Positions 13,387 through 62,367 of a DNA stretch of 64,000 bases are shown here, piece after piece (positions within the stretch are counted from its first letter, which is position 1; each line of letters begins with the position of its first letter). The DNA lies in IMG/VR virus record IMGVR_UViG_3300048121_001678, positions 186,001 through 250,000 of that record; one strand, 5' to 3'. The position numbers and the translations under genes are program-made. The notes under the pieces are model-generated. The model was given only the letters and a program-made list of their open reading frames with translations, had not been told where the DNA came from and made no database searches.

Positions 13387-14184
13387 ATGAAAGATATATC
13401 AGTAGTTCTCCCTATTGAGAGCTCAAAACACAAAAATTTTGTAGAGTTGTTTACAAACGCAATTAAATCAATTCAAAATCAATCAGTACCACCAAAAGAG
13501 CTAGTGTTAGTTCATTCTAATGAAGAGTCTTTAGTCGAGTTTTTAACTAACTTCGAATTTAGTGGTTTAACTGTTAATATGGTTGAAAATAAAGGTAACA
13601 CTGATTTTGCATCGCAAATGAATTTAGGTGTAGAAAAATCAGAGTCTGAATGGGTTTCATTTTTAGAATTTGACGATGAGTATGCAACTATATGGTTTAA
13701 AAATGTTCAAACATTTATAGAAGCACATCCAAATGTCGGAGGATTCTTATCGTTAGTTGTTGATGTTGACCACAAAGGTCAATTTGCTGGTTTCACAAAT
13801 GAGGCTACTTTCGCAGCGTCAATGAACACAGAAATTGGTTATTTAACCAATGAAGTCTTACTCGATTATCAAAACTTCCAATCTGCAGGTATGGTAATTA
13901 ATAAAAAAACATATCAGGATATGGGTGGTTTTAAACCGTCTTTTAAACTCACATTCGTATATGAATTCTTATTAAGATTAACATATAACTCGGTTAAAAT
14001 TATGACAATACCTAAAATTGGGTATAAGCACCTTAACATGAGAGAAGGTTCTATATTTTGGAACTATAAAAATGGAGATAATAAAGTTACTGAAGACGAG
14101 ATTAGATTTTGGTTAGACTCGGCAAAAAAAGAGCATTTCTTTACTGAAGATAGAAACATAAAATATGAATCTGAAACTGTTTAA
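13387..14184 (+). CDS. GT2 glycosyltransferase
   Basis: ISVVLP, SIQNQ, NLGV...EWVSFLEFDD, MGGF. Confidence 0.8.
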   Translation: MKDISVVLPIESSKHKNFVELFTNAIKSIQNQSVPPKELVLVHSNEESLVEFLTNFEFSGLTVNMVENKGNTDFASQMNLGVEKSESEWVSFLEFDDEYATIWFKNVQTFIEAHPNVGGFLSLVVDVDHKGQFAGFTNEATFAASMNTEIGYLTNEVLLDYQNFQSAGMVINKKTYQDMGGFKPSFKLTFVYEFLLRLTYNSVKIMTIPKIGYKHLNMREGSIFWNYKNGDNKVTEDEIRFWLDSAKKEHFFTEDRNIKYESETV

Positions 14185-14939
14185 TGTTTTTATCAGGAGA
14201 CACAAACGGTCCGTTACCTACACCAACTAAAAAAAGAGGTAGGAAACCAAAACCGGGTAGTAATTATTTTGATGTGAGAGAAGAGAATGCCGTTAGGATG
14301 TTTCTCACCGCCTCCACAACAACAGAAAAGAATGAGATTTATAATGAATTTTTAAAAGCACCATTAGATAAAATGATTGAGTCTATTATCAGAAGATATA
14401 AACTTTATCGTAAAGGAATGGATTTTAGAGATATACATGTAGATACACATTCTTTTCTAATTACTAAAGTAGATAAATTTAAACCAGCAAAAGGTAAGAA
14501 AGCATATTCTTATTTTGGTACTATTTGTAAAAACTATTTGATGGGTCAAATCATCAAAGACCAAAAAGACCAAAATAGAAAGATATCTTACGAAGACATA
14601 TCATCATCATTAGAAAGTAGACCTGACTTAATATATCATTTAGAACATGATGTTGTTGAACCAAGTCAGGTTATTAAACATTTTTTAAAGGAAATGGAAG
14701 AGTTTATGGATAAAACTAATTTAAATAAAAATGAAGTTAAATTGGGTTATGCGTTAATGGAGTTGTTTGAAAATTATGAAACTATTTTTATTGGTACTGA
14801 TAATAATAAATTTAATAAAAATATCATATTACTCTCATTAAGAGAAATGACGAATTTATCCACTAAAGAAATCAGAACCTCAATGAAGAAATATAAAACA
14901 CTGTATTATAATTTGGTTAAAAAAATCAATAATATATAA
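14184..14939 (+). CDS. phage sigma factor, T4 gp55-like (late transcription)
   Basis: NYF...KM...II..Y...KFKPAKGKKAYSYFGTICKN resembles sigma region 2 of gp55 (F.P.K..NPFAYFT.I). Confidence 0.6.
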   Translation: MFLSGDTNGPLPTPTKKRGRKPKPGSNYFDVREENAVRMFLTASTTTEKNEIYNEFLKAPLDKMIESIIRRYKLYRKGMDFRDIHVDTHSFLITKVDKFKPAKGKKAYSYFGTICKNYLMGQIIKDQKDQNRKISYEDISSSLESRPDLIYHLEHDVVEPSQVIKHFLKEMEEFMDKTNLNKNEVKLGYALMELFENYETIFIGTDNNKFNKNIILLSLREMTNLSTKEIRTSMKKYKTLYYNLVKKINNI

Positions 14940-14954
14940 AATTTAGACCAAAGA

Positions 14955-14961
14955 TATTTAT
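14955..14961 (+). promoter_or_regulatory. late-promoter-like motif TATTTAT
   Basis: Recurrent motif 5-50 nt upstream of structural genes; here inside the palindrome TATTTATAAATA. Confidence 0.55.
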
Positions 14962-14966
14962 AAATA

Positions 14967-15344
14967 ATGGGAAGACCAAAGAAAAAAGAGATTGTACTAA
15001 ATAAAGACTCGGTTTTAAGTCTTATGCAAGAAATCTACAATGAACTTGTGGAACAAAGAAGTACTGCGGTTAGAATACAAAACAAAATGCTTGGAATGTT
15101 AAAAGAACCAAAAGACATGACAGTAATTGGTCCCGTTATAAAAGAACAACAAAAGATTATTAATGACACCATAGAGAAAAAACTATCGTTGTCAAAATTA
15201 CAGTCATCTATTTGGGAAAAATCTCAAAACACATCAGAGGAGTCATTTAATATATCCGATATGGATGACGATGTTCTCTCAGCACTTATTGAAAAGGATT
15301 CTGACACCAGTAAGGGTAATACTGAAGGGTATAAACTAGATTAA
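14967..15344 (+). CDS. hypothetical coiled-coil protein
   Basis: Intact ORF behind a TATTTAT motif. Confidence 0.75.
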   Translation: MGRPKKKEIVLNKDSVLSLMQEIYNELVEQRSTAVRIQNKMLGMLKEPKDMTVIGPVIKEQQKIINDTIEKKLSLSKLQSSIWEKSQNTSEESFNISDMDDDVLSALIEKDSDTSKGNTEGYKLD

Positions 15345-15354
15345 ATTATTCATT

Positions 15355-19060: not shown

Positions 19061-19082
19061 GTATTTATAGTAAAAACGAATA

Positions 19083-20552
19083 ATGTCAATTTACAAGTCA
19101 TATTTTAAACGTAACGATACGTTAATTTTTAACTCATATACAAACACAGGTCAAAATCCTGTTGTTGAATTATTTTTTGGTCGAGTAGATAATTTAAATA
19201 CACCAAAAGGTTACTCACGTTTTATATTTGATATAGACTTAGAAGAATTACAAACTAAACTTTCTAACGGTACAATTTCTACAGGATGTACTCCGTCCAT
19301 GACACATACCTTAAGAATGACTAACACGTCTTCTTTTGATAAAGAATTATTAAATTCAACTTGGTCTAATGGTCGAAGAAGAGCAACATCATTCGACTTA
19401 ATATTATTTAGAATACCTAAAGTTTCAGGTTCCACTGGTGATTCCCAAACATGGGATGAGGGTGTAGGTCAAGATTATTACAACACAAAAGACGCACTTG
19501 AAGGCAATAAATCGTTTTCAGATAGACCAGTAAATTGGTACCAAAGAAATACTGTTAAAAATTGGTCAGTAAATGGATTATATGATAATTCAAATACACA
19601 AACAGGTTCAACTATTGGTTTAAATTATTCTGCACTAACTATTGTTGATAGACAACACTTTGAATTTGGTGATGAGGATATTGAGTTTGATATGACTAAT
19701 GAGATTAATGACGTTTTATCCGGTGCAACTACAGGAGTTACAGGGTGGGGAGTTGCATTTGTTCCTGAAGTAGAAAACATAACAGGTATGACTGAGAATT
19801 ATTCTGTTGGGTTTTTCTCTCGTCACACTCAGACCTTTTATGACCCATTCTTAGAGACAAACTATGATGACTTAATACAGGATGATAGATATACATTTTA
19901 TGAAGGTAAAAGTAATAAACTTTATCTTTACGCCTATGCAAATGGTAACCCAATTATTTTAGACAATAATCCTGAAGTGGATATTCTTGATGAAAGTGAT
20001 AATATAATTCAAACATTGACCGCTTGTAGTAGGTCTAATGGTGTTTATGAGGTAACAGTATCTGCAATAACGTCCTCAAATACCCCATGTATGTATTATG
20101 ATAATTGGAGAGAATTGGCATATAATGGTGATACTATTACACCGATAGAGAATGAATTCGTGTTACTTAAAAATGTGGATTATTTTACAATAGGTACTAG
20201 AACTGAAGAACCATCAATTTATGGTTTTGATTTTAATGGTATTCTACAAAATGAAAAAATTCTTAATACAGATATTAGAAAAGTTAATGTGACACTTAAA
20301 AAGGCGTACACCTCTAAGGAAGTTCTAAAACATGTTGACTGTTACTATAGAATATATGTCAAAGAAGGTAACACCGAAGTTCAGGTTCAAGATTGGACAC
20401 AAATTAATAGGACGGCTGACGGGTTTTACTTCGTATTCGACACAACTGATAAGATACCAAATGAATATTTTATAGATATCAAAGTGAACACTGACAGAGA
20501 AGTTAATACTTATAAAAGAGAACTACAATTCCAAATCGTAAACAAAAAATGA
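19083..20552 (+). CDS. probable virion structural protein
   Basis: TATTTAT at 19062-19068; beta-rich, T/N/S-rich composition. Confidence 0.55.
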   Translation: MSIYKSYFKRNDTLIFNSYTNTGQNPVVELFFGRVDNLNTPKGYSRFIFDIDLEELQTKLSNGTISTGCTPSMTHTLRMTNTSSFDKELLNSTWSNGRRRATSFDLILFRIPKVSGSTGDSQTWDEGVGQDYYNTKDALEGNKSFSDRPVNWYQRNTVKNWSVNGLYDNSNTQTGSTIGLNYSALTIVDRQHFEFGDEDIEFDMTNEINDVLSGATTGVTGWGVAFVPEVENITGMTENYSVGFFSRHTQTFYDPFLETNYDDLIQDDRYTFYEGKSNKLYLYAYANGNPIILDNNPEVDILDESDNIIQTLTACSRSNGVYEVTVSAITSSNTPCMYYDNWRELAYNGDTITPIENEFVLLKNVDYFTIGTRTEEPSIYGFDFNGILQNEKILNTDIRKVNVTLKKAYTSKEVLKHVDCYYRIYVKEGNTEVQVQDWTQINRTADGFYFVFDTTDKIPNEYFIDIKVNTDREVNTYKRELQFQIVNKK

Positions 20553-21021: not shown

Positions 21022-21543
21022 AGAATGGATTACCCATTCGTAACCCTTTATACCCCCATAAGATAGATAAGTCATATTTTCTTTTTCATCTTTAGGGTTC
21101 CGACTCTCTGTAATATAAGACTTATCACAAAAAGATTTAATTTTTTCTAATATTTCTCTTGACACATACTGATTCTCCAAAAGTGTCGTGGCGATTCTCA
21201 TATCCACACCTGACTTTTTAATTCTATATAAGTTCTTCTTAACTGATTCTCTGACCACTTTTGGTACCCTAAATTTATTAAAACCCTCATCAACAGTAAT
21301 TTTAAGGTCACCAGTACCTTTAATTACTCTGTGATATACCATCTTAGGGATAATGTATGTTTGTCCCTCTTGCAAGACCTGAGGTAACTCCTCGTCCATC
21401 TGCAACATCCAACCGTCAGATGATTCCACAAATACCTTACGGTCACTTGTGTCTCTATGCCATATTAATTCTTCAGAATCCACATTTTCTGTAAATACTC
21501 TTCTAAATTTATGATTACTAATATTTTTCTGTTTGTATATCAT
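21013..21543 (-). CDS. hypothetical protein with cupin-like N-terminal domain
   Basis: ELIWHRD...YIIPKMVYHRVIKG; TAATG-coupled start. Confidence 0.6.
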   Translation of the reverse strand: MIYKQKNISNHKFRRVFTENVDSEELIWHRDTSDRKVFVESSDGWMLQMDEELPQVLQEGQTYIIPKMVYHRVIKGTGDLKITVDEGFNKFRVPKVVRESVKKNLYRIKKSGVDMRIATTLLENQYVSREILEKIKSFCDKSYITESRNPKDEKENMTYLSYGGIKGYEWVIHSLL

Positions 21544-23183
21544 TACCAAAATCTTCCAGGTACATTTTTACCAAAATCTTTATGTGCTCTACACGCCCAA
21601 TAACCAGCTTTAGTTTTGTCTTTTTTCTTTGCACATTGGTGTCTGGCGGCAAATGACTTACGAGCACCTGGGTCATTCCATTTAGCGGTCATAACAGGAG
21701 AACCATAACTAACCTTTTTAACTTTACCCGTCTTAGGGTTTTTAACGTATACATACCACTTCTTAGAACCACCACTCTTAGGTTTACCTAATTCTACTTT
21801 CTTACCCTTATATTCTGCCTCATTAATCATTGGGAAATCCAAAGGTAGTCTCTCACCTTCGTATATAAAGAACTTACCCAAATCGCTATCCAACAACTCG
21901 TTATCTAATTCATTCTTATAAAGTCCTTTTTCTCTCAACTTTCTTGCTTCATTAATAACATCAAAGTATTTTGGTGAACCGGTCCTGAAAATATTATCAC
22001 TCAAAGGTATGTTATTATCAATATGGTATTTAACATCTTCAGACATTGTTTCAACAGCATTAGTATATGAACGTAATAAAGTCTCAATTAACTTTACCTC
22101 ATCATCTGTCTTTTCAGATGGAATAACAACATCATCAAAATTTTGAAGTTCTTTTGGTGCCAATGGTGGGTCTAATAAGAACCTTTTATTCACCCAATCC
22201 CTTAACTCATTTTCAACAAAAAATTCAGGTACTGGTTCATCATCAGGTCTATCAGATGCTATGTCAGAAATATGGTAAGCAAATTTTAACTTGTTACTCT
22301 CATCCATTAACTTCATTAACCCATCACTAATAAAGAAAATTTTACTAAGTGGGTCAACACCTCCCAAATCACCTTCAGCGATATTAAAAATACTCATTAT
22401 GGTCTTTGACCACCATGATTTATATGTTGGAGTTTCTTTTAATGTTGGTTTTAAAATTTTATTAAATGCTCTCATTCCCGAACCAACCATACCTGCAATT
22501 ACTATTTGAGGTATAAACCACGGTAATAAACGTATAAACGCTTTAAACCCACCTTCACCAATATGTTTGGCTAATCTTTTATTTCTGGCGGCAGACACAA
22601 TACTCTTTAATTGTCCAAAAGTAATTGGACCTTGAGCACTACAGAATTTTTTGGAATCACAAATACTTTTAATTACTTTACTAGAAGGGTTAACCTCTTT
22701 AGTGTCATCTTCAGTGATTTTAGGTGTATTATCATTACCACACTTGTGACACATATATAAATCATCACCACCATCTTCTATCTTCCAATTCCAACCACAA
22801 TTATCACATAAAACACTATCATTCACTATCGATTCTAATATCATATATGTTAATTTATCAATAGATTCTTTTTTATAGTTTTTAACTTTGATTCTAGTTG
22901 GTTTTTGTCCTTTACCCGATTGAGTATCTTTTTTTTCTTTTTCTCTTTTTCTACGACATGCAGAATCTTTTTCTTTTTGTGACATCTTTCCTGCCACACC
23001 GGCACCTCTACATACTGGGTATCCACCCTTATCCGAGTCTTTTCTTCCACAAGGAGGGTGACCTCCACCTTTCTTTTTCTTACAAATATTAACCCACGGA
23101 CCTTTAGGTTGTGATGAACCTTTCTTTTTCTTTTTCTTTCCGAACCAAACCGCTAAATCTTCACTTAGAATATATTTACTCAT
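21543..23183 (-). CDS. modular basic/Cys-rich late protein (Zn ribbon, DUF6321-like C-terminus)
   Basis: CDNC...CHKC; YVYVKNPKTGKVKKVSYG...ARKSFAARHQC...AGYWACR. Confidence 0.7.
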   Translation of the reverse strand: MSKYILSEDLAVWFGKKKKKKGSSQPKGPWVNICKKKKGGGHPPCGRKDSDKGGYPVCRGAGVAGKMSQKEKDSACRRKREKEKKDTQSGKGQKPTRIKVKNYKKESIDKLTYMILESIVNDSVLCDNCGWNWKIEDGGDDLYMCHKCGNDNTPKITEDDTKEVNPSSKVIKSICDSKKFCSAQGPITFGQLKSIVSAARNKRLAKHIGEGGFKAFIRLLPWFIPQIVIAGMVGSGMRAFNKILKPTLKETPTYKSWWSKTIMSIFNIAEGDLGGVDPLSKIFFISDGLMKLMDESNKLKFAYHISDIASDRPDDEPVPEFFVENELRDWVNKRFLLDPPLAPKELQNFDDVVIPSEKTDDEVKLIETLLRSYTNAVETMSEDVKYHIDNNIPLSDNIFRTGSPKYFDVINEARKLREKGLYKNELDNELLDSDLGKFFIYEGERLPLDFPMINEAEYKGKKVELGKPKSGGSKKWYVYVKNPKTGKVKKVSYGSPVMTAKWNDPGARKSFAARHQCAKKKDKTKAGYWACRAHKDFGKNVPGRFW

Positions 23184-23260
23184 AACTTGACTATTGTATA
23201 TTTTCTATTATACATTATATAAATATTACGAAATAGATAAACAAAACAATATTTCTCAAA

Positions 23261-23930: not shown

Positions 23931-25661
23931 TTATCTTAAAGAGTTCATATCGAACGTTCTAACACCATCAACTGTAATAACACCATAGAAACGGTTATTA
24001 ACCATTTTCTTAGCGTATCTAGTCATGATACCCTTGATTGGTGTAAAGTTGAATGGGTTATACATAGTTGGTGTCAACTGTAATGGTACATATGGTGCGT
24101 AAACGTACCCTGTATCCAATAAAGAAGAACCTTTATGTCCCATCAATACAGTGTTAGGTGGGAAGTAAGGGTCACGGTAAACTTGATATCTACCTGATAA
24201 CGTACCTACTCTCTCAATACCCATGTTGTATTGGTCTTGGTCTGGTGCCGCATTTGATACGTGGAAGTATTCCAAGTCATCAAAGATTGCTGAAATTTCA
24301 GAAGAAACTACAATCCAGTTAGCACCACCTCTAAGAGTTGATTTGTGAATTTGAGCCGAGATTTGGTTAATTGCAGTAATCAACGTTTGGTTCCAGTCTT
24401 TTTGGTTATAGTTAACTGAACCATTAGATACTCTCTTCCATCCGTTGTAATCCCAACGTAATGACCAAGCTGCACCTTTTCTCAAGTCTCTTAAGATTTC
24501 ACGGTCAATCTCCGCTGCCACTTGCTCAGATAATAAAGCTGTTAATTCAGCTTCAGCATCGATGTTGTGGAACGCAGAAACGTCTTGTGCTAGTTCTGGA
24601 GACCATTGTGCTCTTAATTTTCTTTCTGTTACAGAAACAGTAACTGCTTCAAGGTCGAAAGAAACTTCACCAATTGCATCTTCAAATTCTAACGTTTTGT
24701 AGATTCTGTATGATGCGTCGAATTCAGGTGACGCTGCGTAAGTTGTACCTGAATAACCATCTAAAGAAGATGTACCAATACCAGCTACTACTGATGTATC
24801 TACAGATAAGTAGATAATACCTTCAGCATCACAGATATTGTCATATTTTCCACCAGGGAAGTTAGTTGATGCTTCAGCACCGTACTGAACAATACCTTTA
24901 CCATACTTCTGTGTTACCACATTGAAGTTGAAGTAATTAGCACCTGAATAAACTTCTAATGAAGCCAAGAATTCTTCAGTGTCCATTGCATTACCATCAG
25001 GACCGATTAGTTTACCTGCTCCGTCTCCTGAGAAACCTGACAACGCAACAATTACTGCTCTTGTTTCACCTGTGTAATCAGTTGATGTAGCCTCTACTAA
25101 AGTACTACCATCCCACTTATAGTTTACTAATGCTTTAGTAATTCCACTATACTGTCCTTTTGAATAATCAAATAGTCCAGCTGGGTCAGAATTTGGTGTT
25201 TCTCCTTCATAGAATTGGTCGTACAAGTTCTTTTGACCTGCAGTGTAACCTGTGTCTGTTGAAGAAGGACCTCCTGGTGCTCCGTAAGGTTTATAGTGTT
25301 CGCCATTGATTTGGTTAGCGTTCGCTTCTTGAATTTTAGGTACGAAGTAGAACAATTTACCGATTGGTAAGTTCATTGCTTGTACTGATACAATATCGTT
25401 AGCTAGTAATTTCGAGAATACTCTTCTAACGATAGGAAAGACTACAGTTTCAAATGAACCTGAGTCAGAAGCGTTTGCTGCTTCGTTAATTAAGTGAGAC
25501 GCTTGGTTTTCGTATAATTGTGCTACGTTTTCTCTCAAGTGACCTTTCAAGCCATCTAAGAAACCTAACTTGTCCCATTTGTTGATTGTGTCTTCTTTGA
25601 TAACTTTTAGGTGTTTTAACCCAATGTTACCTACAAGACCTGATTCTAATAATGCTCCCAT
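23931..25661 (-). CDS. major capsid protein (T4 gp23-like)
   Basis: VRRVF..L.ANDIVSVQAM, RKLRAQWSPELAQD, AEIDREI, YAPYVPL, GIMTRYA. Confidence 0.95.
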   Translation of the reverse strand: MGALLESGLVGNIGLKHLKVIKEDTINKWDKLGFLDGLKGHLRENVAQLYENQASHLINEAANASDSGSFETVVFPIVRRVFSKLLANDIVSVQAMNLPIGKLFYFVPKIQEANANQINGEHYKPYGAPGGPSSTDTGYTAGQKNLYDQFYEGETPNSDPAGLFDYSKGQYSGITKALVNYKWDGSTLVEATSTDYTGETRAVIVALSGFSGDGAGKLIGPDGNAMDTEEFLASLEVYSGANYFNFNVVTQKYGKGIVQYGAEASTNFPGGKYDNICDAEGIIYLSVDTSVVAGIGTSSLDGYSGTTYAASPEFDASYRIYKTLEFEDAIGEVSFDLEAVTVSVTERKLRAQWSPELAQDVSAFHNIDAEAELTALLSEQVAAEIDREILRDLRKGAAWSLRWDYNGWKRVSNGSVNYNQKDWNQTLITAINQISAQIHKSTLRGGANWIVVSSEISAIFDDLEYFHVSNAAPDQDQYNMGIERVGTLSGRYQVYRDPYFPPNTVLMGHKGSSLLDTGYVYAPYVPLQLTPTMYNPFNFTPIKGIMTRYAKKMVNNRFYGVITVDGVRTFDMNSLR

Positions 25662-27067: not shown

Positions 27068-27208
27068 TTTTTGTTTTTTGCGCAATTGTTTATTGATTAT
27101 TATCATATAAATATTACCAAAACACAAAAAATATCATTTTTGGAATATATAAGCATAAAAAAATCGGAAGTCACCCTCCGATTCTTTAGTTTTTTGGTTT
27201 GATTTTTG

Positions 27209-28152: not shown

Positions 28153-28190
28153 ATCATTTAATCTTTATTATAAATACTTAAAAATGGGGA

Positions 28191-28601: not shown

Positions 28602-29051
28602 TTATGATAAATATTCCTTATTTTTCGTTTTGGTCTTAGATAGTGTAAAATAGTTTGAATTATGTAACTCATCTTTATATATTGACGTAGTTATTTTTTT
28701 AACTCTATCTCGTAAAATAGGTGATTTAAAATCAACATGCTCCTTTAAAAATAAAGTAATTTCTAAGTTCATAAAAGATTTTTTACCAATCTGAATCCCA
28801 CTACTTCGTAAATCTAAATCAACAATGTTGTGTGATTCAAATATTAATGGGTCGACGGTCTCTAATAAGTTATGTTTAATATTTCTATTTAAGTTACCAT
28901 TTATCCTATTCCAATTATCTGATTCTATTTTTGGTTGAATCCACGACTGTATAGTTATGTAGATTGATTTAAGATTATGTGCATCTACAGTACCATAATT
29001 ACATTTAGCATTTTCAAAGATATCTAACTTTGAACTTTTTCCTTTTTTCAT
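28602..29051 (-). CDS. hypothetical protein
   Basis: Intact ORF divergent from rpsU. Confidence 0.75.
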   Translation of the reverse strand: MKKGKSSKLDIFENAKCNYGTVDAHNLKSIYITIQSWIQPKIESDNWNRINGNLNRNIKHNLLETVDPLIFESHNIVDLDLRSSGIQIGKKSFMNLEITLFLKEHVDFKSPILRDRVKKITTSIYKDELHNSNYFTLSKTKTKNKEYLS

Positions 29052-29088: not shown

Positions 29089-29148
29089 ATAATAATAAAG
29101 TTTACTCCATTAGTCAAAATTGACATTAAAAAACTATTTATCTATAAT
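29089..29148. promoter_or_regulatory. back-to-back TTGAC-N17-TAxxAT promoters overlapping a TATTTAT motif
   Basis: + strand TTGACA(29120)-N17-TATAAT(29143); - strand TTGACT(29117)-N17-TATTAT; TATTTAT at 29135. Confidence 0.5.
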
Positions 29149-30102: not shown

Positions 30103-30121
30103 TTTTATTTATAAATATACT

Positions 30122-31996: not shown

Positions 31997-32045
31997 TTTG
32001 TTTTTTTATATAAATAGTAGTAATATTCTACAATAATTCAATCTT

Positions 32046-38156: not shown

Positions 38157-38222
38157 AATAGTTTTTATATATAAATATACCGTAATAAAGGATTTGACAT
38201 TATTTCCTATATTTAGGTAGTT

Positions 38223-38972: not shown

Positions 38973-38994
38973 AAGTTATAAATAGAGTGAAGTT

Positions 38995-39541: not shown

Positions 39542-39586
39542 ACCAATAAATATAAAAAAACCCCGATTTCTCAGGGTTTTTAACAT

Positions 39587-42146: not shown

Positions 42147-42162
42147 ATAAAACCCCTTCCTA

Positions 42163-42194: not shown

Positions 42195-42211
42195 TATCAA
42201 ATAATTAAGAA

Positions 42212-45127: not shown

Positions 45128-45132
45128 AAAAA

Positions 45133-45189
45133 CTTTTACTATAAATACTTGATAGTTTGGATAATTAACAAATAAGCCTTATATTTGAA
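45133..45189. promoter_or_regulatory. bidirectional late/early promoter cassette, copy 1
   Basis: Minus-strand TATTTAT plus plus-strand TTTG-N20-TATATTTG; closely similar to 46608-46664. Confidence 0.75.
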
Positions 45190-45191
45190 CT

Positions 45192-46598: not shown

Positions 46599-46607
46599 GT
46601 TTAAAAT

Positions 46608-46664
46608 CTTTTACTATAAATACTTGACACTTTGGATTATTGATAAATTATACGTATATTTGAA
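46608..46664. promoter_or_regulatory. bidirectional late/early promoter cassette, copy 2
   Basis: CTTTTACTATAAATACTTGA-nnn-TTTGGAT-N17-TATATTTGAA shared with 45133-45189. Confidence 0.75.
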
Positions 46665-46683
46665 TTATAAGCAAATAAACAAT

Positions 46684-48373: not shown

Positions 48374-48401
48374 AATGCTACGTTTTATTAATGATAAATA
48401 G

Positions 48402-49440: not shown

Positions 49441-49580
49441 AATTTATATTTTTTTGTTTTTATTTAACAATAAATAGATATTACTCTTGATTATTCCAAT
49501 AATAATGTTGTGGGTTTATAAAATTTGCAGTATATTTGTATTGTTAATAAGGACATAAACCACGAAAAAAAAGAAAAAAC

Positions 49581-51297: not shown

Positions 51298-52179
51298 TTA
51301 TAAGGACATTAACATGTCCAATAACTCTTGTTGTGGGAACATATCCACTTTATCTTTACGGGTGTTTGTGTGTGTCCACAAACCTTTAACCTTACCGTAG
51401 TATGCGTCCTCATTCCATTCGAATGCATCTGCACCTTTATCTTTAATCAATGATGGTAATCCTGCTCTAATATCAATACCGTCTCTATCACCAATCCATA
51501 ATATCCACTTTCTTAACGCTTCAATTTGTTCGTCAGAATAACGATGCCACGTTTTGTGACCTCTAAATTCTTTATCAAGTGTAACTATTTGTGACTCAGC
51601 AACAGATGTTCCAGCATATGTTTTACCATTCTTAATCCATCCAAAGTTACAAACCTCAATGGCAACTGAGTTAACGTGCATCTTTTGTGAACCATTTTTA
51701 CCTAAGTGCCAACCGTAATTACCTTCAGGGAAAGCTTGTACCATTACACCGTCATATGTGTCATCATTACCCTTTACTGATTGACCACCCAGTACAAATT
51801 CCGTGGCAACTGCACCTCTACTGTCTCTACCCCACGAATCAATACATTTATAAGGATTATTCCAACCTGCAGTGTGGTGTAAAAATAACCATTCAGGTTT
51901 AATTGGACCTTCTTTATATTCACCCTTAGGTAAAAAATGTTGGTTTATCATCAAACCATTATCAGTGGTATAAGACTGTTCAGAATTATCTGTAGTTGCT
52001 AGACCCATTGCGTCCCAAGTTTTTGGACCTACTATCCCGTCAGAAACCAAACCATTATCCATTTGCCATTTTTTAACAGTTAACTCTGTACCTTTACCAA
52101 AAATACCATCGGTAGTTATATTGAAGAATTCTTGTAGAGTTTTCACTTCTTTACCTCTTGAACCTATTTTTAAAATCAT
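51298..52179 (-). CDS. endolysin: PG-binding domain plus amidase_2
   Basis: GSRGKEVK.LQ...DGIFGKGT...DGIVGPKTW; LHHTAG, IEVCN, WTH...DK.D. Confidence 0.85.
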   Translation of the reverse strand: MILKIGSRGKEVKTLQEFFNITTDGIFGKGTELTVKKWQMDNGLVSDGIVGPKTWDAMGLATTDNSEQSYTTDNGLMINQHFLPKGEYKEGPIKPEWLFLHHTAGWNNPYKCIDSWGRDSRGAVATEFVLGGQSVKGNDDTYDGVMVQAFPEGNYGWHLGKNGSQKMHVNSVAIEVCNFGWIKNGKTYAGTSVAESQIVTLDKEFRGHKTWHRYSDEQIEALRKWILWIGDRDGIDIRAGLPSLIKDKGADAFEWNEDAYYGKVKGLWTHTNTRKDKVDMFPQQELLDMLMSL

Positions 52180-52271
52180 ATTATATTATTTAAAAGTTTA
52201 TTTACCATAAATATATCTTTGATTATGAAATTTATTATCTTTACCGTTATATGGTTATCAAATTAAATTAA

Positions 52272-54811: not shown

Positions 54812-55981
54812 CTATTGTTCTTTTGATGTTATTTTTCCTTTTTCCAAAGTTACACTATAATCCTGTGGTCCTCTAACTTGGGCATTTTTACCATCCTGAC
54901 TTATGTAAATTTTAAACTCATTATTAAATGTAGGTTCATCAATAGGATACATATTTATCAGATGTTCTCTCACATTTGATTGTGTCAATTCACCAATTTC
55001 TCCTGTTGCGTTTGAAAACATATCTTTAATCCATGCAATATCACCCCAATTATTGAACCTTGCCAATGTTGAATACCATAATAACGCACCCAGAGAAGGT
55101 CCAAGACTAAATCCACTAATAACGGTGAGTAGTTTTTTCCACATGGGTAGTTTTGACCACCATGATGGATTGATTTCATTAACTCTTTTAAGTTCGGTCA
55201 ATATATCTGGGTCAATTCTTCTAGAAGAAGAAATTGCGTCTGACATTAATTTATTATATTCAGTATCTGAAATATCTTTTAGGAATGAACCTTTTTTTCT
55301 CGCATTTTTGATGAATTCTTTGAACGCTTTTTCATTTCTTGCAACCATTTCTTTTGTTGTTTTAGAAACAGCATCAGTAGGTATATTATCAACAACACTT
55401 GCACTCTTCAATAGGTCATCGACCGCATTATCTAAATTAGAAATAACGTTTTTATTTATAAAGTCACTATATTTTGAATCAAATTCAGACTTGAAGTCCC
55501 TAACTAATTTTGACTTAATTTCATCAGCACCTTCTAAGTATGGTAATTCATCTAATTTATCTGAATAATATTTTATAATCTTATTACGTTGGTCCATAGT
55601 GATTTGACCCATGCTATCAACTTTTGCAAATATTTTTGAACCAATCTCATCGAAATTAGAACCAAAAAACTTACCTGATTTCATAAACTTAACTAAGTCA
55701 TCCACATTATCAATTGTTGATTTTGATAATATTTCTAATACATCGTCAGAAAGGTTATCAATTCCATCTGTATCAATTCTTCTGATGACATCATCTATTT
55801 GATTATCTGTTAAGTTGAATAACTTAGTTAATGGGTCCAACAAATCATCTGATGTTTTTAGTACTTTCTTTACTAAAGGTTTTGGTAACGGTATTGGTTG
55901 TTCAACTAATAATTTACTCGATAAACCCATAATTTCATGGATTCGATTAATATCTTCATTAATTATTTTTTTATTTTTCAT
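54812..55981 (-). CDS. hypothetical late protein with C-terminal hydrophobic segment
   Basis: IINEDINRIHEIMG leader; LLTVISGFSLGPSLGALLW. Confidence 0.7.
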   Translation of the reverse strand: MKNKKIINEDINRIHEIMGLSSKLLVEQPIPLPKPLVKKVLKTSDDLLDPLTKLFNLTDNQIDDVIRRIDTDGIDNLSDDVLEILSKSTIDNVDDLVKFMKSGKFFGSNFDEIGSKIFAKVDSMGQITMDQRNKIIKYYSDKLDELPYLEGADEIKSKLVRDFKSEFDSKYSDFINKNVISNLDNAVDDLLKSASVVDNIPTDAVSKTTKEMVARNEKAFKEFIKNARKKGSFLKDISDTEYNKLMSDAISSSRRIDPDILTELKRVNEINPSWWSKLPMWKKLLTVISGFSLGPSLGALLWYSTLARFNNWGDIAWIKDMFSNATGEIGELTQSNVREHLINMYPIDEPTFNNEFKIYISQDGKNAQVRGPQDYSVTLEKGKITSKEQ

Positions 55982-56028
55982 ATAATTTCTTTAATTACTA
56001 ATAATAAATAGTTTTATTTATTATAAAT

Positions 56029-57270
56029 TTATAAGTTTGCTAGTTCACTATCCATATTACTTAATACTTTATTAATATATTCAACTTTTTCTTCGTCCGT
56101 GGTTTCAATCACCTTTCCAATCGAAATTTGTACACTTTCCTTAATTTCTGTTGATTCATTAACCATTTGAGATAATAAATCTTTTTGAAACTTTTCTTTT
56201 TCTTTTTCAGATAGTTTAACGTATTCTTCAGGTAACTCAACTCTTCTGTAATCCAATCCTTTAATTTCGACACCTAAAATTTTACCAATTTGCATAAAAG
56301 TGAGGAGTCCACCTCCTAACGCAGCTACTCTCCAAGTTGCTCTCCATGGGAGTAGACCAACTTTAGTAAAATATAATAACGCACCTATTAATTTCTTACC
56401 CGTATATTTTGACAAAGATTTTGAAATTAAACTACTTAGTTTCGAATATGCTTGGACATTTTTACCTATCCAATCAGCATTCTTTTCAAGTTCCATACTA
56501 AGCTTTCTTTCCATTGGTGATAAATCTAAACCCTTTGATACTTTATTTAAAAAGGTTTTAAGTGCACCAGATGTGAACTTTTTTACAAAAGGAATTTTAT
56601 TCAATAACATACCACCAGGTATAACTGCAAACGCAGCACCAATACCTGCCGATTCATAATCCTTCTCTTTAACATATAATGCGATATCCGCAGCTTCTAA
56701 AACACCGGCAATAGCAAGACCACCGATTCCACCTGTTGCCACAGTAACGATAAGTGCACCTATAGGTAATACCCAATGCCAAAAATCTTCAGGTAATGGA
56801 GGTGATGTTTGACGCTCTTCCCAATCTTCTAAATCTGATTTATAAACCTTCATTAATAGACCCTTACCTTTAATACCTTTACAAGATGTCCTATATTGGG
56901 AACAACTACATATTTTATTATCCTTACAAAGTCTTTTTAATCGTGGAGATGTGTACGTTACAAAGTAATCTAATTTATTCATCATCACCTTCTTGTCATA
57001 TGATGACATATTTGATGAGTATACAATGTCTTGGTGAGATGGAGGACTAGGTTTATTTTTACCTGTGTAGTTTAACATTAATCCAGGTGGTATTGACTTT
57101 CCATCAGGCATCAAACCTAAATACTGAGGGTCAACTCTAGTGTTATCTGACTGCATAGTCCTATCAGGAATATTAAACTGCTGTTCCTGAATATTCTCAT
57201 TAAGGGTTTTAGACGAATCGTAATTCATCTTTAATAATATATCTTTTAATATTTGTTCATTATCTACCAT
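56029..57270 (-). CDS. hypothetical late membrane-inserting protein
   Basis: G/A-rich hydrophobic hairpin WVLPIGALIVTVATGGIGGLAIAG...AGIGAAFAVIPGG. Confidence 0.65.
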   Translation of the reverse strand: MVDNEQILKDILLKMNYDSSKTLNENIQEQQFNIPDRTMQSDNTRVDPQYLGLMPDGKSIPPGLMLNYTGKNKPSPPSHQDIVYSSNMSSYDKKVMMNKLDYFVTYTSPRLKRLCKDNKICSCSQYRTSCKGIKGKGLLMKVYKSDLEDWEERQTSPPLPEDFWHWVLPIGALIVTVATGGIGGLAIAGVLEAADIALYVKEKDYESAGIGAAFAVIPGGMLLNKIPFVKKFTSGALKTFLNKVSKGLDLSPMERKLSMELEKNADWIGKNVQAYSKLSSLISKSLSKYTGKKLIGALLYFTKVGLLPWRATWRVAALGGGLLTFMQIGKILGVEIKGLDYRRVELPEEYVKLSEKEKEKFQKDLLSQMVNESTEIKESVQISIGKVIETTDEEKVEYINKVLSNMDSELANL

Positions 57271-57557
57271 AATGGGTTTCCTTTGCCTCTATTTATTCCT
57301 GAGTCCCATTTAGACGTACCGTCAATTGGATTGGCTTTACCTCTTGTTAATCCTGTTTCCCATGTTGTCATTGATGGTCCTGATGGTGCTGGTTCTCCAT
57401 CATCTTGCTCATCAATTTCACCTTCAGTTTCATCATCAGGATAACAATCACATCCATCGTCATAACCTTCAGGACCTTTATACATTGGACTATTAGGTTC
57501 TTCATCGATACCCATGACTTCCTTAATACGTGAAATATCTTCTTTTAATAACCCCAT
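57264..57557 (-). CDS. small late protein with W..G..RGK.NP repeat
   Basis: WETGLTRGKANPI and WDSGINRGKGNPL; LLKEDISRIKEVMG leader. Confidence 0.7.
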   Translation of the reverse strand: MGLLKEDISRIKEVMGIDEEPNSPMYKGPEGYDDGCDCYPDDETEGEIDEQDDGEPAPSGPSMTTWETGLTRGKANPIDGTSKWDSGINRGKGNPLW

Positions 57558-57617
57558 TAGGAAACATTTCTATATAAATAGTTAGTTTTATTAAAAAATA
57601 GTTTGTATATTCGTTTT

Positions 57618-58382: not shown

Positions 58383-58406
58383 AAAAGGAGGTGAAAACCT
58401 CCTTTT
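58383..58406. terminator. bidirectional terminator
   Basis: AAAAGGAGGT-GAAA-ACCTCCTTTT. Confidence 0.85.
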
Positions 58407-58857
58407 ATTTTTTTAACATTTGTTGTATTGTTTCGATATTTTGAATGAACTTCTCAGGATTATCTTTAACCCATTGTTTTACACTTTCAGGTAGGTGAGA
58501 TTTCTCCACTTCCTCCATCATCACTATTTTCATCGTTTTTCCCTGACTCTCCGACTCCACCATAACGTCACCAAAAGCACCGTATAACTTTCTTCTTAAT
58601 GTTGGTACTCCACTTTCAAAGGTTATATTGTAACCATTTTTTTTAGCCCATTGGCTTAATTGTTTCGTATCAAGAATATTATTTTTTTTAAAGGGGAAGT
58701 TTTTAATTAACCTTTCAGGGTCACCTTTAACACCAAATATCTTTAAAGATGGACTAACAACTACGGTAATACTATTCTCATCAAAACCAAAAAATGTTGG
58801 TTTCGACAATTTAATTCTACCAAGTAGTTTAACCAATAAATCATTTATATTGTCCAT
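58405..58857 (-). CDS. hypothetical protein
   Basis: ATG at 58857 behind TATTTAT (58862-58868). Confidence 0.65.
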   Translation of the reverse strand: MDNINDLLVKLLGRIKLSKPTFFGFDENSITVVVSPSLKIFGVKGDPERLIKNFPFKKNNILDTKQLSQWAKKNGYNITFESGVPTLRRKLYGAFGDVMVESESQGKTMKIVMMEEVEKSHLPESVKQWVKDNPEKFIQNIETIQQMLKK

Positions 58858-58871
58858 ACTAATAAATATCA

Positions 58872-60371: not shown

Positions 60372-60372
60372 T

Positions 60373-60406
60373 AAAAAACCCCTCGATTGAGGGGTTTTCT
60401 TTTTTT
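60373..60406. terminator. bidirectional terminator
   Basis: AAAAAACCCCTC-GATT-GAGGGGTTTT. Confidence 0.85.
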
Positions 60407-60942
60407 TAGTTAAATTTATTAAACCGATTAAAGTTCTCTAAGATTGTATCTCTTTCGGTTTTGAATGCTTCGTGGAGGTCCTCATCGATTTCCTCATACA
60501 TTCCACATTGTTCTGAACATTCACCTTCTCTCATTTCTGAACCACATTGTTCACACATTTCTTTTTCGTCTAACTTGTGGTCGTGACCTTCACACTCACA
60601 ATCTTCAACAGGACTATCACATGAAGGACAAGTTTCACCTTCACCCATAACCATCTCACCATCCTCAGGACCGTCAGATACAAAGTCATAAGCCGGTTCA
60701 ACATTAGAAACGTCCATATCAGGAGCATCAATAACTGCTTGTTCCTGTAGGTTGTTATCGTACACCTTAACTTCACCAGTATTAGTAATCTGAAGACCGT
60801 TTTTATCCTGTGCCAAATCCTCAACCGTCAACGGTGTTTGATTTGATGGAACATTCCCAGTGGCGTAACCATCATAGAAACTTCTATGTGTATTGAGGAT
60901 AGATGCTCTTTCCTCGTCTGATATCATTGAATAACCTCTCAT
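60406..60942 (-). CDS. acidic late protein with CxxC modules
   Basis: ISDEERASIL leader; CPSC...CEC and CEQCG...EGECSEQCG. Confidence 0.7.
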   Translation of the reverse strand: MRGYSMISDEERASILNTHRSFYDGYATGNVPSNQTPLTVEDLAQDKNGLQITNTGEVKVYDNNLQEQAVIDAPDMDVSNVEPAYDFVSDGPEDGEMVMGEGETCPSCDSPVEDCECEGHDHKLDEKEMCEQCGSEMREGECSEQCGMYEEIDEDLHEAFKTERDTILENFNRFNKFN

Positions 60943-61013
60943 AATTGTATTTTTATTATAAATAGTATTTGAAAGTGAAATATCTTTTTATTATCTTTAC
61001 AAAAAAGATTTAT

Positions 61014-61286
61014 ATGGAAATAGTAGATATTGATTTGGATAACATACATGAAATGGCTGAAGGGGCGATAATCTTAGATGGTTTAGATAATGCGATAATA
61101 GGGATAACTGAAGAGTTCGGTATGGAACCCAGAATCCTTTACTCGGTTAATAAGATTTTAGATATATTATCTAACGATGGTATGACTAATCGTGAAGAAG
61201 CGTTAGAGTATTATTATTACAATATAGTTGGGGGTTATTTTGGGGAGAGAAACCCAATCTTTTTGTCTGACCATTTGGTATATTAA
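61014..61286 (+). CDS. conserved phage hypothetical protein
   Basis: DGLDNAIIG...YS..KI...L...EEALEY..YNI.G.Y.GE.NPIF. Confidence 0.7.
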   Translation: MEIVDIDLDNIHEMAEGAIILDGLDNAIIGITEEFGMEPRILYSVNKILDILSNDGMTNREEALEYYYYNIVGGYFGERNPIFLSDHLVY

Positions 61287-61328
61287 AACATAACCGTTAT
61301 ATTTGTTTAACATTAAAAAATAAAATAT

Positions 61329-61715
61329 ATGCCATACATAAATCCATATGAGTTACCAACACAATACAAAGAACACAAAGAACTCGGACGATTGATTCGT
61401 AAACAAAGATTCAATGTGACTGAGTATGATAATGCTACTAATTTGGATTTTCGTATAACATATATCAAAATGTCTGATTACTACAGAGACATAGAAGTGA
61501 ATGTAAAGGTTTCAGGAACTCTATATCAATGGGGATACTGGGGACGACAGACAAATTCAGGAGGTAGACGCATTACTGGAATGGTAAATCCACGTAGTCG
61601 TAATAGCGACATCCGTTCTGCAATCCAAAAAGAAATTCGTGACTTTTTTAAGTTATTTGGGGTTGAGAAATATCGTGTTAATATAAAGAAAGTTACAGTA
61701 GCAGAGTCTATTTAA
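61329..61715 (+). CDS. hypothetical protein
   Basis: TTTG(61274)-N20-TATATTTG(61298) upstream. Confidence 0.7.
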   Translation: MPYINPYELPTQYKEHKELGRLIRKQRFNVTEYDNATNLDFRITYIKMSDYYRDIEVNVKVSGTLYQWGYWGRQTNSGGRRITGMVNPRSRNSDIRSAIQKEIRDFFKLFGVEKYRVNIKKVTVAESI

Positions 61716-61716
61716 T

Positions 61717-62307
61717 CTACTTCATCATAATGAAGGCTCGAAGAGCTTGTTTGGCTAATAACTTAACCTCACGGTTCATGTTTTCCAAACTTGGCTCTTT
61801 ACCCTTTCGTTCTAAGGATTCGATAGATAGACGAATCATTGCATGTTTGGCGTCATCCGCAGCATCATATAACTCCACATACTTATCCTCATCATAATTT
61901 TCATATTGATTAAACTGAATATAACGTCTAAGATAATCTGAACCTGAATAAATAAAGTGGGTAGATTCCAACATATTCATTACACCTGACATTCTTAATT
62001 TCTCGAAGAAGTCATACAAGATTTTGTTCTCACGACCCAATACATCTGAAACCGCTTGCCATTCAGTCCAATGGTGATTACCACCTTCATTTAGTCTTTC
62101 ACCCTCATCTAACAACCATAAATCCTCAGCAGATACAATTGAAAGGTTGCGACCATTTTCCCAATCAACAGATATTAATAGGTCATCTTTTTCAAATGGG
62201 TCTTCCTGAACTCTGGTGACAACACCTTTAGTACCTGGTGTCATACCTTGTTCGTCTTTCATATAGACCAACACTATTTTATCACCTTCTTTAACTTTAG
62301 GATTCAT
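61717..62307 (-). CDS. DUF4314-like plus DUF5049-like fusion
   Basis: GDKIVLVYM.D...PGTKGVV...V.WENG..L; LRMSGVMNM. Confidence 0.55.
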   Translation of the reverse strand: MNPKVKEGDKIVLVYMKDEQGMTPGTKGVVTRVQEDPFEKDDLLISVDWENGRNLSIVSAEDLWLLDEGERLNEGGNHHWTEWQAVSDVLGRENKILYDFFEKLRMSGVMNMLESTHFIYSGSDYLRRYIQFNQYENYDEDKYVELYDAADDAKHAMIRLSIESLERKGKEPSLENMNREVKLLAKQALRAFIMMK

Positions 62308-62367
62308 AATAATTTATTGTTTTAGTATAAATACTATTAATTATATATTTATTCTAAAAGAGTTTAC

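What the first reader, a model, noticed from the sequence alone, without database searches (positions are those of the whole stretch)
14184..62352. Late-promoter motif is TATTTAT, the reverse complement of the T4 late promoter
Seen: TATTTAT(A) lies on the coding strand a few to ~45 nt upstream of more than 20 genes. Plus-strand sites: 14955, 19062, 29135, 62346. Minus-strand sites (read as ATAAATA on +): 23219, 27107, 28170, 28607, 30111, 32010, 38171, 38978, 39546, 45141, 46616, 48394, 49470, 52207, 56004, 57574, 58862, 60958, 62327. These include the portal, protease, scaffold/capsid and endolysin genes. Known: T4 gp55 reads TATAAATA on the non-template strand. Inference: the gp55-like sigma at 14184-14939 has a different specificity, resembling the host TAnnTTTG -7 box, and the motif defines the late regulon.
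Basis: partly seen in the sequence, partly recalled or inferred. Interest (0 to 1): 0.6.

Follow-up and report, generated by a model that had tools for sequence, protein, structure and literature searches.

The report
Conserved TATTTAT late-gene promoter motif
A sharply defined 7-base signal, TATTTAT, sits just upstream of virion and lysis genes in this 297-kb T4-related ("Far-T4") phage and its many environmental relatives. It is most likely the late promoter read by a phage sigma factor related to T4 gp55, which would give this widespread phage group a predicted transcription programme.

Summary
All 23 listed sites exist, each 0-35 nt upstream of a same-strand ORF.

**Enrichment.** TATTTAT is not enriched in the window overall (46 sites against 47 expected). 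It is the most enriched 7-mer in sense-strand upstream regions genome-wide (80 against 7.3).

**Orientation.** Co-directional intergenic DNA holds 53 sense and 13 antisense sites.

**Conservation.**
- The motif is invariant upstream of the protease gene in 54 of 55 diverged relatives.
- It is the top upstream 7-mer in Microcystis phage Mel-JY01.
- It precedes late-module genes in Flavobacterium phage immuto.

**Sharpness.** Every single-base variant sits at background, and there is no -35 element.

**The sigma gene (14184-14939).**
- Its family matches Sigma70_r2.
- Its model's best PDB match is T4 gp55 (Z 11.0).
- It carries an extra C-terminal domain.
- It has no conserved clamp-binding tail.

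**Interpretation: partly supported.** "Reverse complement of T4" is formally true. However, TATTTATA differs from TATAAATA only at the two central bases in the same orientation. The motif also occurs in a phage recorded on a cyanobacterium, so likeness to the Bacteroidota -7 box does not explain it.

**Still inferred:** promoter function, late timing and the sigma-motif pairing. No transcript 5' ends could be mapped.

**Caveat:** a second, RpoD-like sigma lies outside the window.

The parts
14184..14939 (+). Phage sigma factor, 251 aa. N-terminal sigma-region-2 domain closest to T4 gp55; additional C-terminal helical domain; KRGRKPK basic motif at the N-terminus.
   Evidence: phrog_234 'late sigma' E=0.008. 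19/84 family members hit phrog_234 and 58/84 hit Pfam Sigma70_r2, best 5e-7. AF2 model pLDDT 91. Top of 48,161 PDB chains is 7d7d_F, T4 gp55: Z 11.0, 118 aa aligned, rmsd 5.3. No TATTTAT upstream of the gene itself.
14955..14961 (+). TATTTAT site, 5 nt before ORF 14967-15344 (125 aa), directly after the sigma gene's stop.
   Evidence: The same arrangement (sigma gene, then TATTTAT, then a small gene) is seen in phage immuto and in 7 of 8 distant sigma-homologue loci.
19062..19068 (+). TATTTAT site, 14 nt before ORF 19083-20552 (489 aa, unknown).
29135..29141 (+). TATTTAT site, 15 nt before ORF 29157-29348 (63 aa).
62346..62352 (+). TATTTAT site, 15 nt before ORF 62368-63042 (224 aa). Divergent partner of the site at 62327.
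23219..23225 (-). TATTTAT site, 35 nt before ORF 21543-23183 (546 aa, phrog_7595, unknown).
27107..27113 (-). TATTTAT site before the ORF ending at 25691 (in-frame ATG at 0 and at 39 nt). Putative scaffold gene, followed by the gp23-like major capsid gene 23931-25661.
   Evidence: Metatranscriptome contigs cover this gene at the highest depth of the stretch.
28170..28176 (-). TATTTAT site, 17 nt before the prohead protease gene 27433-28152.
   Evidence: phrog_207 E=9e-44. The motif is invariant in 54/55 distinct relatives although the flanks differ.
28607..28613 (-). TATTTAT site, 17 nt before ORF 28191-28589 (132 aa, GTG start).
30111..30117 (-). TATTTAT site, 8 nt before ORF 29362-30102 (246 aa). 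Part of a palindromic TATTTATAAATA.
32010..32016 (-). TATTTAT site, 13 nt before the portal gene 30122-31996.
   Evidence: phrog_213 E=4e-67
38171..38177 (-). TATTTAT site, 14 nt before a 48-aa ORF (38010-38156) heading a minus-strand gene run.
38978..38984 (-). TATTTAT site, 5 nt before ORF 38223-38972 (249 aa, phrog_36119).
39546..39552 (-). TATTTAT site, 4 nt before ATG of ORF 39245-39541. Preceded by a hairpin plus T-run.
45141..45147 (-). TATTTAT site, 13 nt before ORF 43271-45127 (618 aa).
   Evidence: About 40 nt of upstream context resembles that of the site at 46616.
46616..46622 (-). TATTTAT site, 17 nt before ORF 45438-46598 (386 aa).
48394..48400 (-). TATTTAT site, 20 nt before ORF 47306-48373 (355 aa).
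49470..49476 (-). TATTTAT site, 29 nt before ORF 49180-49440 (86 aa).
52207..52213 (-). TATTTAT site, 27 nt before the endolysin/amidase gene 51298-52179.
   Evidence: phrog_2649, phrog_1794
56004..56010 (-). TATTTAT site, 22 nt before ORF 54812-55981 (389 aa).
57574..57580 (-). TATTTAT site, 16 nt before ORF 57264-57557 (97 aa), which heads 56029-57270.
58862..58868 (-). TATTTAT site, 4 nt before ATG of ORF 58405-58857 (150 aa).
60958..60964 (-). TATTTAT site, 15 nt before ORF 60406-60942 (178 aa).
62327..62333 (-). TATTTAT site, 19 nt before ORF 61717-62307 (196 aa).

Best explanation
(A)TATTTAT(A) is the -10-type core of a phage-specific promoter class. The phage has no detectable RNA polymerase of its own. 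Host RNA polymerase is therefore thought to be redirected by the phage sigma encoded at 14184-14939. That sigma's region-2 domain (gp55-like) would recognise the 7-mer on the non-template (coding) strand, with no -35 element needed.

Transcription is predicted to start at the conserved A-run 4-7 nt downstream of the motif. This would give very short leaders of roughly 6-13 nt, and leaderless mRNAs for the sub-class with ATG 4-5 nt after the motif.

The regulon covers head, packaging-associated and lysis genes here, and baseplate/tail genes in relatives. It is therefore most likely the late class.

The sigma gene closes a motif-free block of nucleotide-metabolism and glycosyltransferase genes. 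The first TATTTAT follows 16 nt after its stop codon.

Shown: enrichment, orientation, sharpness and conservation of the motif, and the sigma-2 / gp55-like fold. Inferred: promoter function, the start site, late timing and which sigma reads the motif.
For: **Motif statistics**
- Top upstream 7-mer, 80 against 7.3 expected.
- 53 sense against 13 antisense sites in co-directional intergenic DNA, with an AT-matched null of 7.4.
- Distance to ATG peaks at 12-17 nt but ranges from 0 to 60.
- No -35-like conservation, and an A-run at +11 to +14.
- All 21 single-base variants are at background, at most 57 against 340 for the exact 7-mer.
- The same pipeline recovers TATAAATA in T4, 12 against 0.6.

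**Conservation**
- 54/55 relatives keep the motif upstream of the protease gene in otherwise diverged DNA.
- 402/1026 genes in 79 related loci carry it.
- It precedes late-module genes in Flavobacterium phage immuto.
- In Microcystis phage Mel-JY01 it lies 25-45 nt upstream of ATGs that have their own GGAG sites.

**Transcription-unit layout**
- 7 of 44 terminator hairpins are followed within 40 nt by a same-strand motif. The expectation is 0.65 and the reverse-orientation control gives 1.
- 25 of 77 strand-run head genes carry the motif.

**Sigma**
- Sigma70_r2 is matched by 58/84 family members.
- The best PDB match is gp55, Z 11.0.
- It is the only match in the genome to phrog_234 and to its own family profile.

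**Pairing of sigma and motif**
- immuto and Mel-JY01 keep this sigma and the motif, but have no Sigma70_r2-type RpoD-like sigma.
- TATTTAT directly follows the sigma gene in 7 of 8 distant homologue loci.

**No phage polymerase:** no RNA polymerase Pfam domains were found.
Against: - No transcript 5' end was mapped. The only RNA data available were assembled metatranscriptome contigs. These show the region in RNA libraries but cannot show starts, and some contigs cross motif sites.
- Timing is inferred from gene content. Many motif-bearing genes have unknown function, and the terminase and capsid genes lack a motif of their own.
- In the 484-kb phage LR756508, which has a 22%-identical sigma homologue, TATTTAT is not enriched around the capsid gene.
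- The tight 12-17 nt spacing to ATG in the close relatives would also fit an RNA-level signal.
- Highly diverged split RNA polymerases of the phiKZ type could escape the Pfam models used.
Confidence: 0.68

Rival explanations
1. TATTTAT is a promoter, but it is read by a different factor: the phage's RpoD-like sigma (about genome position 68 kb) or the host's primary sigma. The gp55-like protein would have another target or role.
For: A canonical sigma with regions 1.2, 2 and 4 is encoded in the same genome. The motif shares T1, A2, T5 and T7 with the Bacteroidota -7 box TAnnTTTG. The gp55-like protein has only weak sequence matches to known sigmas.
Against: immuto and Mel-JY01 use the motif but have no Sigma70_r2-type gene at E<=10, and both have the gp55-like homologue. 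Host-type TTTG-N17-21-TAnnTTTG promoters form a separate set in front of other genes. Variants nearer to TAnnTTTG are not enriched. The motif is shared by phages recorded on different host phyla.
Confidence: 0.15
2. The motif acts in RNA, not DNA. It would be a processing site or a translation-initiation/leader element of Shine-Dalgarno-less mRNAs, placed at a fixed distance from the start codon.
For: The spacing is narrow, 12-17 nt before ATG, in this phage and its close relatives. These genes lack Shine-Dalgarno sequences and have A-rich leaders.
Against: Distances range from 0 to 60 nt. In Mel-JY01 the motif lies 25-45 nt upstream of genes with separate GGAG sites. The motif heads strand-switch units and follows terminator hairpins. 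T4 late promoters show a similar 14-28 nt distance to ATG. The phage encodes a matching candidate sigma.
Confidence: 0.08
3. The functional element is the T4-type TATAAATA on the opposite strand, driving antisense transcripts. Alternatively, the pattern is a by-product of AT-rich intergenic DNA.
For: TATTTATA is the exact reverse complement of TATAAATA. The whole-window count equals the shuffle expectation.
Against: Strand bias is 53:13 in co-directional spacers, and the antisense count is at background. Density in convergent spacers is at background. Flanks are asymmetric: A at -1 and an A-run downstream. Conservation is at a fixed place upstream of orthologous genes. The AT-matched null gives 3.8 against 18 observed in the window.
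Confidence: 0.02

Closest known systems
T4 late promoters (TATAAATA at -13 to -6) read by gp55 with gp33 and the gp45 sliding clamp (PMC2988020, PMC7892883)
   Same: A single short A/T element is tightly adhered to. There is no -35 element. An A/T-rich segment lies downstream. Sites occur on both strands in front of virion and lysis genes, a short distance from ATG. The phage sigma has a region-2 domain whose closest solved structure is gp55. Six of eight motif positions are identical in the same orientation.
   Different: The central two bases are TT, not AA. The conserved core is 7 nt and the eighth base is only 58% A. The sigma has 251 aa rather than 185, with an extra C-terminal domain. 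No conserved hydrophobic clamp-binding tail was seen. No gp45-type clamp was detected by Pfam, and no gp33 search was possible. Dependence on replication is unknown.
In-silico late-promoter consensuses of other T4-family phages (KVP40, 44RR, S-PM2, Aeh1) as reviewed in PMC2988020
   Same: The consensus is derived by comparing upstream regions of late genes in T4-related genomes.
   Different: According to that review the consensuses are highly similar to T4's, and Aeh1 varies only at -13/-12. None has the central TT described here.
Bacteroidota primary-sigma promoters (-33 TTTG, -7 TAnnTTTG)
   Same: An AT-rich element starting with TA lies close to the start site. Such promoters are present in this genome in front of other genes, for example 42212, 49581 and 61329.
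   Different: TATTTAT lacks the TTTG end and has no -33 partner. It is also used by a phage recorded on a cyanobacterial host.
Rhodothermus phage RM378 (the cultured 'Far-T4' reference)
   Same: It has a gp23-like capsid protein (30% identical) and an annotated sigma near the head genes. Its top upstream motif shares the TATTTA core.
   Different: The RM378 motif is TTATTTAA. Its sigma, Rm378p144, is barely alignable to this one (E 1.5).

Membership tests
T4-type late promoter | One short, tightly conserved A/T element on the coding strand upstream of late genes, without a -35 element | tested here: met
   There is only a weak G/C-depleted patch 14-16 nt upstream of the motif.
T4-type late promoter | Consensus TATAAATA | tested here: not met
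   The consensus here is (A)TATTTAT(A). In upstream regions TATAAAT occurs 48 times in sense and 216 in antisense, so it is only the mirror of the real motif.
T4-type late promoter | Transcripts start about 6 nt downstream of the element, late in infection | not testable with these tools
   Only assembled metatranscriptome contigs were available. They cannot show starts or timing.
T4-type late promoter | Activation through gp33 and the gp45 sliding clamp | tested here: inconclusive
   No match to PF09116 or PF02916 in the genome. No conserved C-terminal tail on the sigma. Diverged clamps may escape these models, and gp33 was not searched.
gp55 family (T4 late sigma, phrog_234) | Sigma region-2 homology domain that docks on the polymerase clamp helices | tested here: met
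   The fold was tested; docking was not. Sigma70_r2 in 58/84 family members. The profile hits SigA region 2 at E 0.003 and gp55 at 0.098. The model's best PDB match is 7d7d_F, gp55: Z 11.0, 118 aa, rmsd 5.3.
gp55 family (T4 late sigma, phrog_234) | Significant sequence match to the family profile | tested here: inconclusive
   This protein scores E 0.008, 17 bits. 19/84 homologues match, best 7.5e-6.
gp55 family (T4 late sigma, phrog_234) | About 185 aa, no region 4, hydrophobic C-terminal clamp-binding motif | tested here: not met
   The protein has 251 aa with a well-folded extra domain at residues 152-251 (pLDDT 92). C-termini are not conserved across the family.
Two-domain sigma-70 family factor (sigma-2 plus sigma-4) | C-terminal region-4 helix-turn-helix | tested here: inconclusive
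   Several sigma region-4 chains are among the top hits of the isolated domain (3mzy Z 5.9, 2h27 Z 5.2, 6ono Z 4.9), but all lie in the range the tool calls common for helical domains. No Pfam region-4 match.
Bacteroidota sigma-A promoter | -7 TAnnTTTG with -33 TTTG | tested here: not met
   Genuine examples occur elsewhere in the genome.

The most novel reading that the evidence does not exclude
Far-T4-type phages run late transcription with a self-sufficient, fused factor. A gp55-like region-2 domain would read TATTTAT. A C-terminal sigma-4-like domain, together with an N-terminal AT-hook-like motif, would take over the flap-binding and DNA-tethering roles that T4 splits between gp33 and the sliding clamp. 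Late transcription would then not be coupled to the replisome clamp. A subset of late mRNAs (ATG 4-5 nt after the motif) would be leaderless.
Probability: 0.25. Interest if true: 0.7.

Novelty: new variant of a known kind. Interest (0 to 1): 0.55.

Why it matters
**A gap in the Far-T4 literature.** The Far-T4 phages are abundant in aquatic metagenomes. The study that defined them reported that the T4 core genes for transcription regulation could not be detected, so their transcription programme was unknown (PMC4360716).

**What this adds.** The work here provides a candidate late sigma and a 7-base promoter.
- The sigma family has more than 1,200 clusters at 50% identity and at least 8,000 close homologues.
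- The promoter is conserved from a 297-kb uncultured phage to two cultured phages.

**Practical uses.**
- A simple rule for predicting late regulons and correcting start codons in these genomes.
- A natural experiment on how a gp55-type region-2 domain changes specificity (central AA to TT).
- A directly testable system, because Flavobacterium phage immuto is in culture.

No paper in the searchable library links TATTTATA to a phage promoter.

Tried and rejected
**RNA evidence**
- Metatranscriptome evidence for start sites. Only Logan contigs were available and none of the runs had raw reads. The contigs show the region in RNA libraries, deepest over the putative scaffold gene, but give no 5' ends. 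Some contigs cross motif sites.

**Sigma identification**
- Foldseek against the PDB. All top hits were sigma factors, but at E 0.02-0.3. The Foldseek-independent search was needed to rank gp55 first.
- The single-sequence PDB search gave nothing useful.
- Sequence search of the C-terminal domain against the PDB gave no meaningful hit.

**Other T4 late-transcription components**
- Pfam gp45 models and RNA polymerase models found nothing in the genome. This is weak negative evidence. The T7-type polymerase model also rang in none of the control genomes, so that result says nothing.

**Related loci and genomes**
- The search for related loci with the whole sigma alignment failed because no stretch was conserved enough.
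- One distant homologue, P0247, returned no loci.
- LR756508: the motif is not enriched there. The motif is therefore not universal among holders of distant sigma homologues.
- A megablast of 20 kb of the window against cultured phages found nothing.

**Tests that proved uninformative**
- Whole-genome counts of TATTTATA in immuto and Mel-JY01 are no higher than a backwards-read control. As in the window, only position-aware tests show the signal.
- Mutual exclusivity of the two promoter types was not significant: 6 genes carry both, against about 8 expected.


Full report
**Context.** The window is bases 186,001-250,000 of a 297,164-bp IMG/VR virus record, 99% complete and 34% G+C. Its major capsid protein (23931-25661, minus strand) belongs to the T4 gp23 family. 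The nearest cultured relatives are Rhodothermus phage RM378, Flavobacterium phage immuto and Microcystis phage Mel-JY01. It is therefore a jumbo member of the 'Far-T4' branch of the T4 superfamily. Window genes identified:
- portal, prohead protease, large terminase, capsid and endolysin on the minus strand;
- on the plus strand (215-14939), a block with glycosyltransferases, an exonuclease, a dUTPase, a methyltransferase, PhoH and the candidate sigma.

**The observation.** Each has a same-strand ORF starting 0-35 nt downstream.

The raw count is not unusual: 46 in the window against 47.2 +/- 6.6 in shuffles. A naive enrichment test would therefore 'refute' the finding. The signal is positional:
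- Across the whole genome TATTTAT is the most over-represented 7-mer in the 60 nt upstream of genes on the coding strand, 80 against 7.3. TATTTATA is the top 8-mer, 47 against 3.0.
- In spacers between co-directional genes there are 53 sense and 13 antisense copies. Markov models trained on those same 27%-G+C spacers predict 7-14 for either strand. The binomial p is 7e-7.
- Convergent spacers are at background.
- Within the window, 18 sense copies lie in upstream regions against an AT-matched null of 3.8 +/- 2.0.
- The same script run on T4's late region returns TATAAATA as the top 8-mer, which validates the method.

**Anatomy of the motif.** I pooled 374 distinct sites from this genome and 79 related loci.
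- The flanks show A at -1 (70%) and A at the eighth position (58%).
- An A-run lies 4-7 nt after the 7-mer (72-79% A).
- There is no -35-like element, only a G/C-depleted patch 14-16 nt upstream.
- All 21 single-base variants of the 7-mer occur at background, at most 57 against 340, and without clear sense bias. TATTTAG (42 sense, 17 antisense) is the only partial exception. All seven positions therefore matter.
- The distance from motif to ATG is bimodal, with a main peak at 12-17 nt and a minor one at 4-5 nt.

**Conservation.**
- Upstream of the protease gene the 7-mer is identical in 54 of 55 non-redundant relatives (73-97% protein identity). The surrounding DNA, and even the upstream gene, differ.
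- In those loci 402 of 1026 genes carry the motif, and it is again the top 7-mer.
- In Flavobacterium phage immuto it follows the sigma homologue directly. It also precedes gp114 (next to the baseplate genes), gp107 and a tail-spike gene. The many small early genes there use a different, long host-like promoter.
- In Microcystis phage Mel-JY01 it is the top 7-mer in the structural region, 12 against 1.5. It lies in front of the terminase gene, the gene in the portal position, the tail tube and other genes, 25-45 nt from ATGs that have their own GGAG sites.
- This last point argues against a ribosome-binding role. It also argues against the idea that the motif mimics the Bacteroidota -7 box.
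- RM378 shows a related motif, TTATTTAA.
- The huge phage LR756508 shows no enrichment.

**Transcription-unit layout.**
- Seven of 44 strict terminator-like hairpins are followed within 40 nt by a same-strand motif. The expectation is 0.65 and the reverse-orientation control gives 1.
- 25 of 77 genes that head a strand run carry the motif. Another 12 carry only a TAnnTTTG box.
- Composite TTTG-N17-21-TAnnTTTG promoters, mostly TATATTTG, sit in front of a separate set of genes such as a peptidase (42212) and 49581 and 61329. A TATATTTG box alone precedes the Lon-like protease gene at 40131. This points to a Bacteroidota host.
- The 19-gene plus-strand block has no motif, against 18 of the other 62 window genes (p = 0.005).
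- The genome's small-ORF region at 250-270 kb has 1 motif in 38 genes.

**The sigma.**
- The 251-aa product of 14184-14939 has no Pfam hit above threshold and only E = 0.008 to phrog_234, 'late sigma'.
- It has a very large family: at least 8,000 close homologues, and 1,204 clusters at 50% identity.
- Of 84 diverse members, 58 match Sigma70_r2 and 19 match phrog_234.
- The family profile hits region 2 of SigA (E 0.003) and T4 gp55 (E 0.098) in the PDB.
- The AlphaFold model has pLDDT 91. In a search of 48,161 PDB representatives its best match is gp55 from the T4 late transcription complex, with Z 11.0 over residues 27-151. Region 2 of many other sigmas follows.
- Residues 152-251 form a separate four-helix domain. 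Its best matches include several sigma region-4 structures, but only at Z 4.3-5.9, which is inconclusive.
- The family has a conserved N-terminal KRGRKPK motif and no conserved C-terminal tail of the kind gp55 uses to bind the clamp (PMC7892883).
- No gp45-type clamp and no phage RNA polymerase were detected, with the usual caveats for diverged proteins.

**Pairing sigma and motif.** The link is by co-occurrence.
- This phage, immuto and Mel-JY01 share the sigma family and the motif.
- The latter two have no canonical Sigma70_r2 gene.
- In 7 of 8 loci fetched with distant homologues (31-51% identical to the queries P0133 and P0185; contigs of 24-36% G+C), TATTTAT lies just after the sigma gene's stop, as it does here and in immuto.
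- Against a simple picture, this genome also encodes an RpoD-like sigma with regions 1.2, 2 and 4, outside the window. LR756508 also lacks the motif.

**Relation to T4.**
- T4 late promoters are a tightly conserved TATA box at about -13 to -6. They have no -35 element and an A/T-rich segment downstream (PMC2988020).
- The present motif has the same architecture.
- In the same orientation TATTTATA and TATAAATA are identical at six of eight positions. They differ only in the central pair, which is also why they are each other's reverse complement.
- I therefore read this as a specificity variant of the gp55-type late promoter, not an inverted one.
- It fails the membership test for the T4 consensus. 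The sigma fails the test for a plain gp55 (length, extra domain, no clamp tail). The claim is 'works like', not 'is'.

**What remains open.**
- Start sites, timing and the reading factor are all inferred.
- The metatranscriptome data reachable here were assembled contigs. They show the region in RNA libraries from marine, estuarine and marsh samples but cannot resolve 5' ends.
- No paper in the searchable library describes this motif as a phage promoter.
- The Far-T4 study states that T4-type transcription-regulation genes were not detected in that clade.

Noticed in passing
Outside the window: G000:C1 about 67714-68538, minus strand (L087:1081-1905): A second phage sigma factor, 274 aa, with canonical regions 1.2, 2 and 4 (Pfam 60, 58 and 25 bits). 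It resembles the RpoD-like sigmas of cyanophages, Lak phages and Bacillus phages. Its promoter class is unknown; it could drive a middle class.
   Followed up: partly
window 42160-42211, 49500-49580, 61270-61328, 63896-63930 and others: Host-type Bacteroidota promoters (TTTG, 17-21 nt, TAnnTTTG, mostly TATATTTG) lie in front of a separate set of genes: a peptidase and several unknowns. A TATATTTG box alone precedes the Lon-like ATP-dependent protease at 40131-42146. This points to a Bacteroidota host and to a second promoter class.
   Followed up: partly
window 14184-14260 (sigma residues 15-25): A conserved basic motif, KRGRKPK, followed by YFG..EE.AV at the N-terminus of the sigma family. 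It looks like an AT-hook and might contact the G/C-depleted patch 14-16 nt upstream of the motif.
   Followed up: no
window 45128-45190 and 46599-46665: The upstream regions of the neighbouring genes 43271-45127 and 45438-46598 are similar over about 40 nt around the motif. This suggests a duplicated promoter-plus-gene unit.
   Followed up: no
window 14955-14966, 30106-30117, 56004-56021: Palindromic or paired sites (TATTTATAAATA, or two motifs back to back) contain the motif on both strands. Some may be bidirectional.
   Followed up: no
L083 (Flavobacterium phage immuto, record 67.6-76.3 kb): About twenty small early genes each carry a nearly identical ~45-nt promoter-leader cassette: GTTGC, about 19 nt, TATATTTAGGTATCAATAATTAAAAC.
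   Followed up: no
L089 (Rhodothermus phage RM378, record 80-130 kb): The top upstream motif is TTATTTAA (15 against 1.1 expected), sharing the TATTTA core. An annotated sigma, Rm378p144, lies next to the head genes. This may be a sister specificity.
   Followed up: partly
window 26500-26975: In four metatranscriptome runs the putative scaffold gene has by far the highest contig depth of the 5.9-kb stretch laid (48-285 against 2-15). Depth from contigs is a poor measure of expression.
   Followed up: no
window 39553-39590: A hairpin plus T-run lies inside the long ORF call 39245-39586. It is followed at once by TATTTAT and an ATG 4 nt later. The true gene probably starts at 39541, and the mRNA may be leaderless.
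   Followed up: partly
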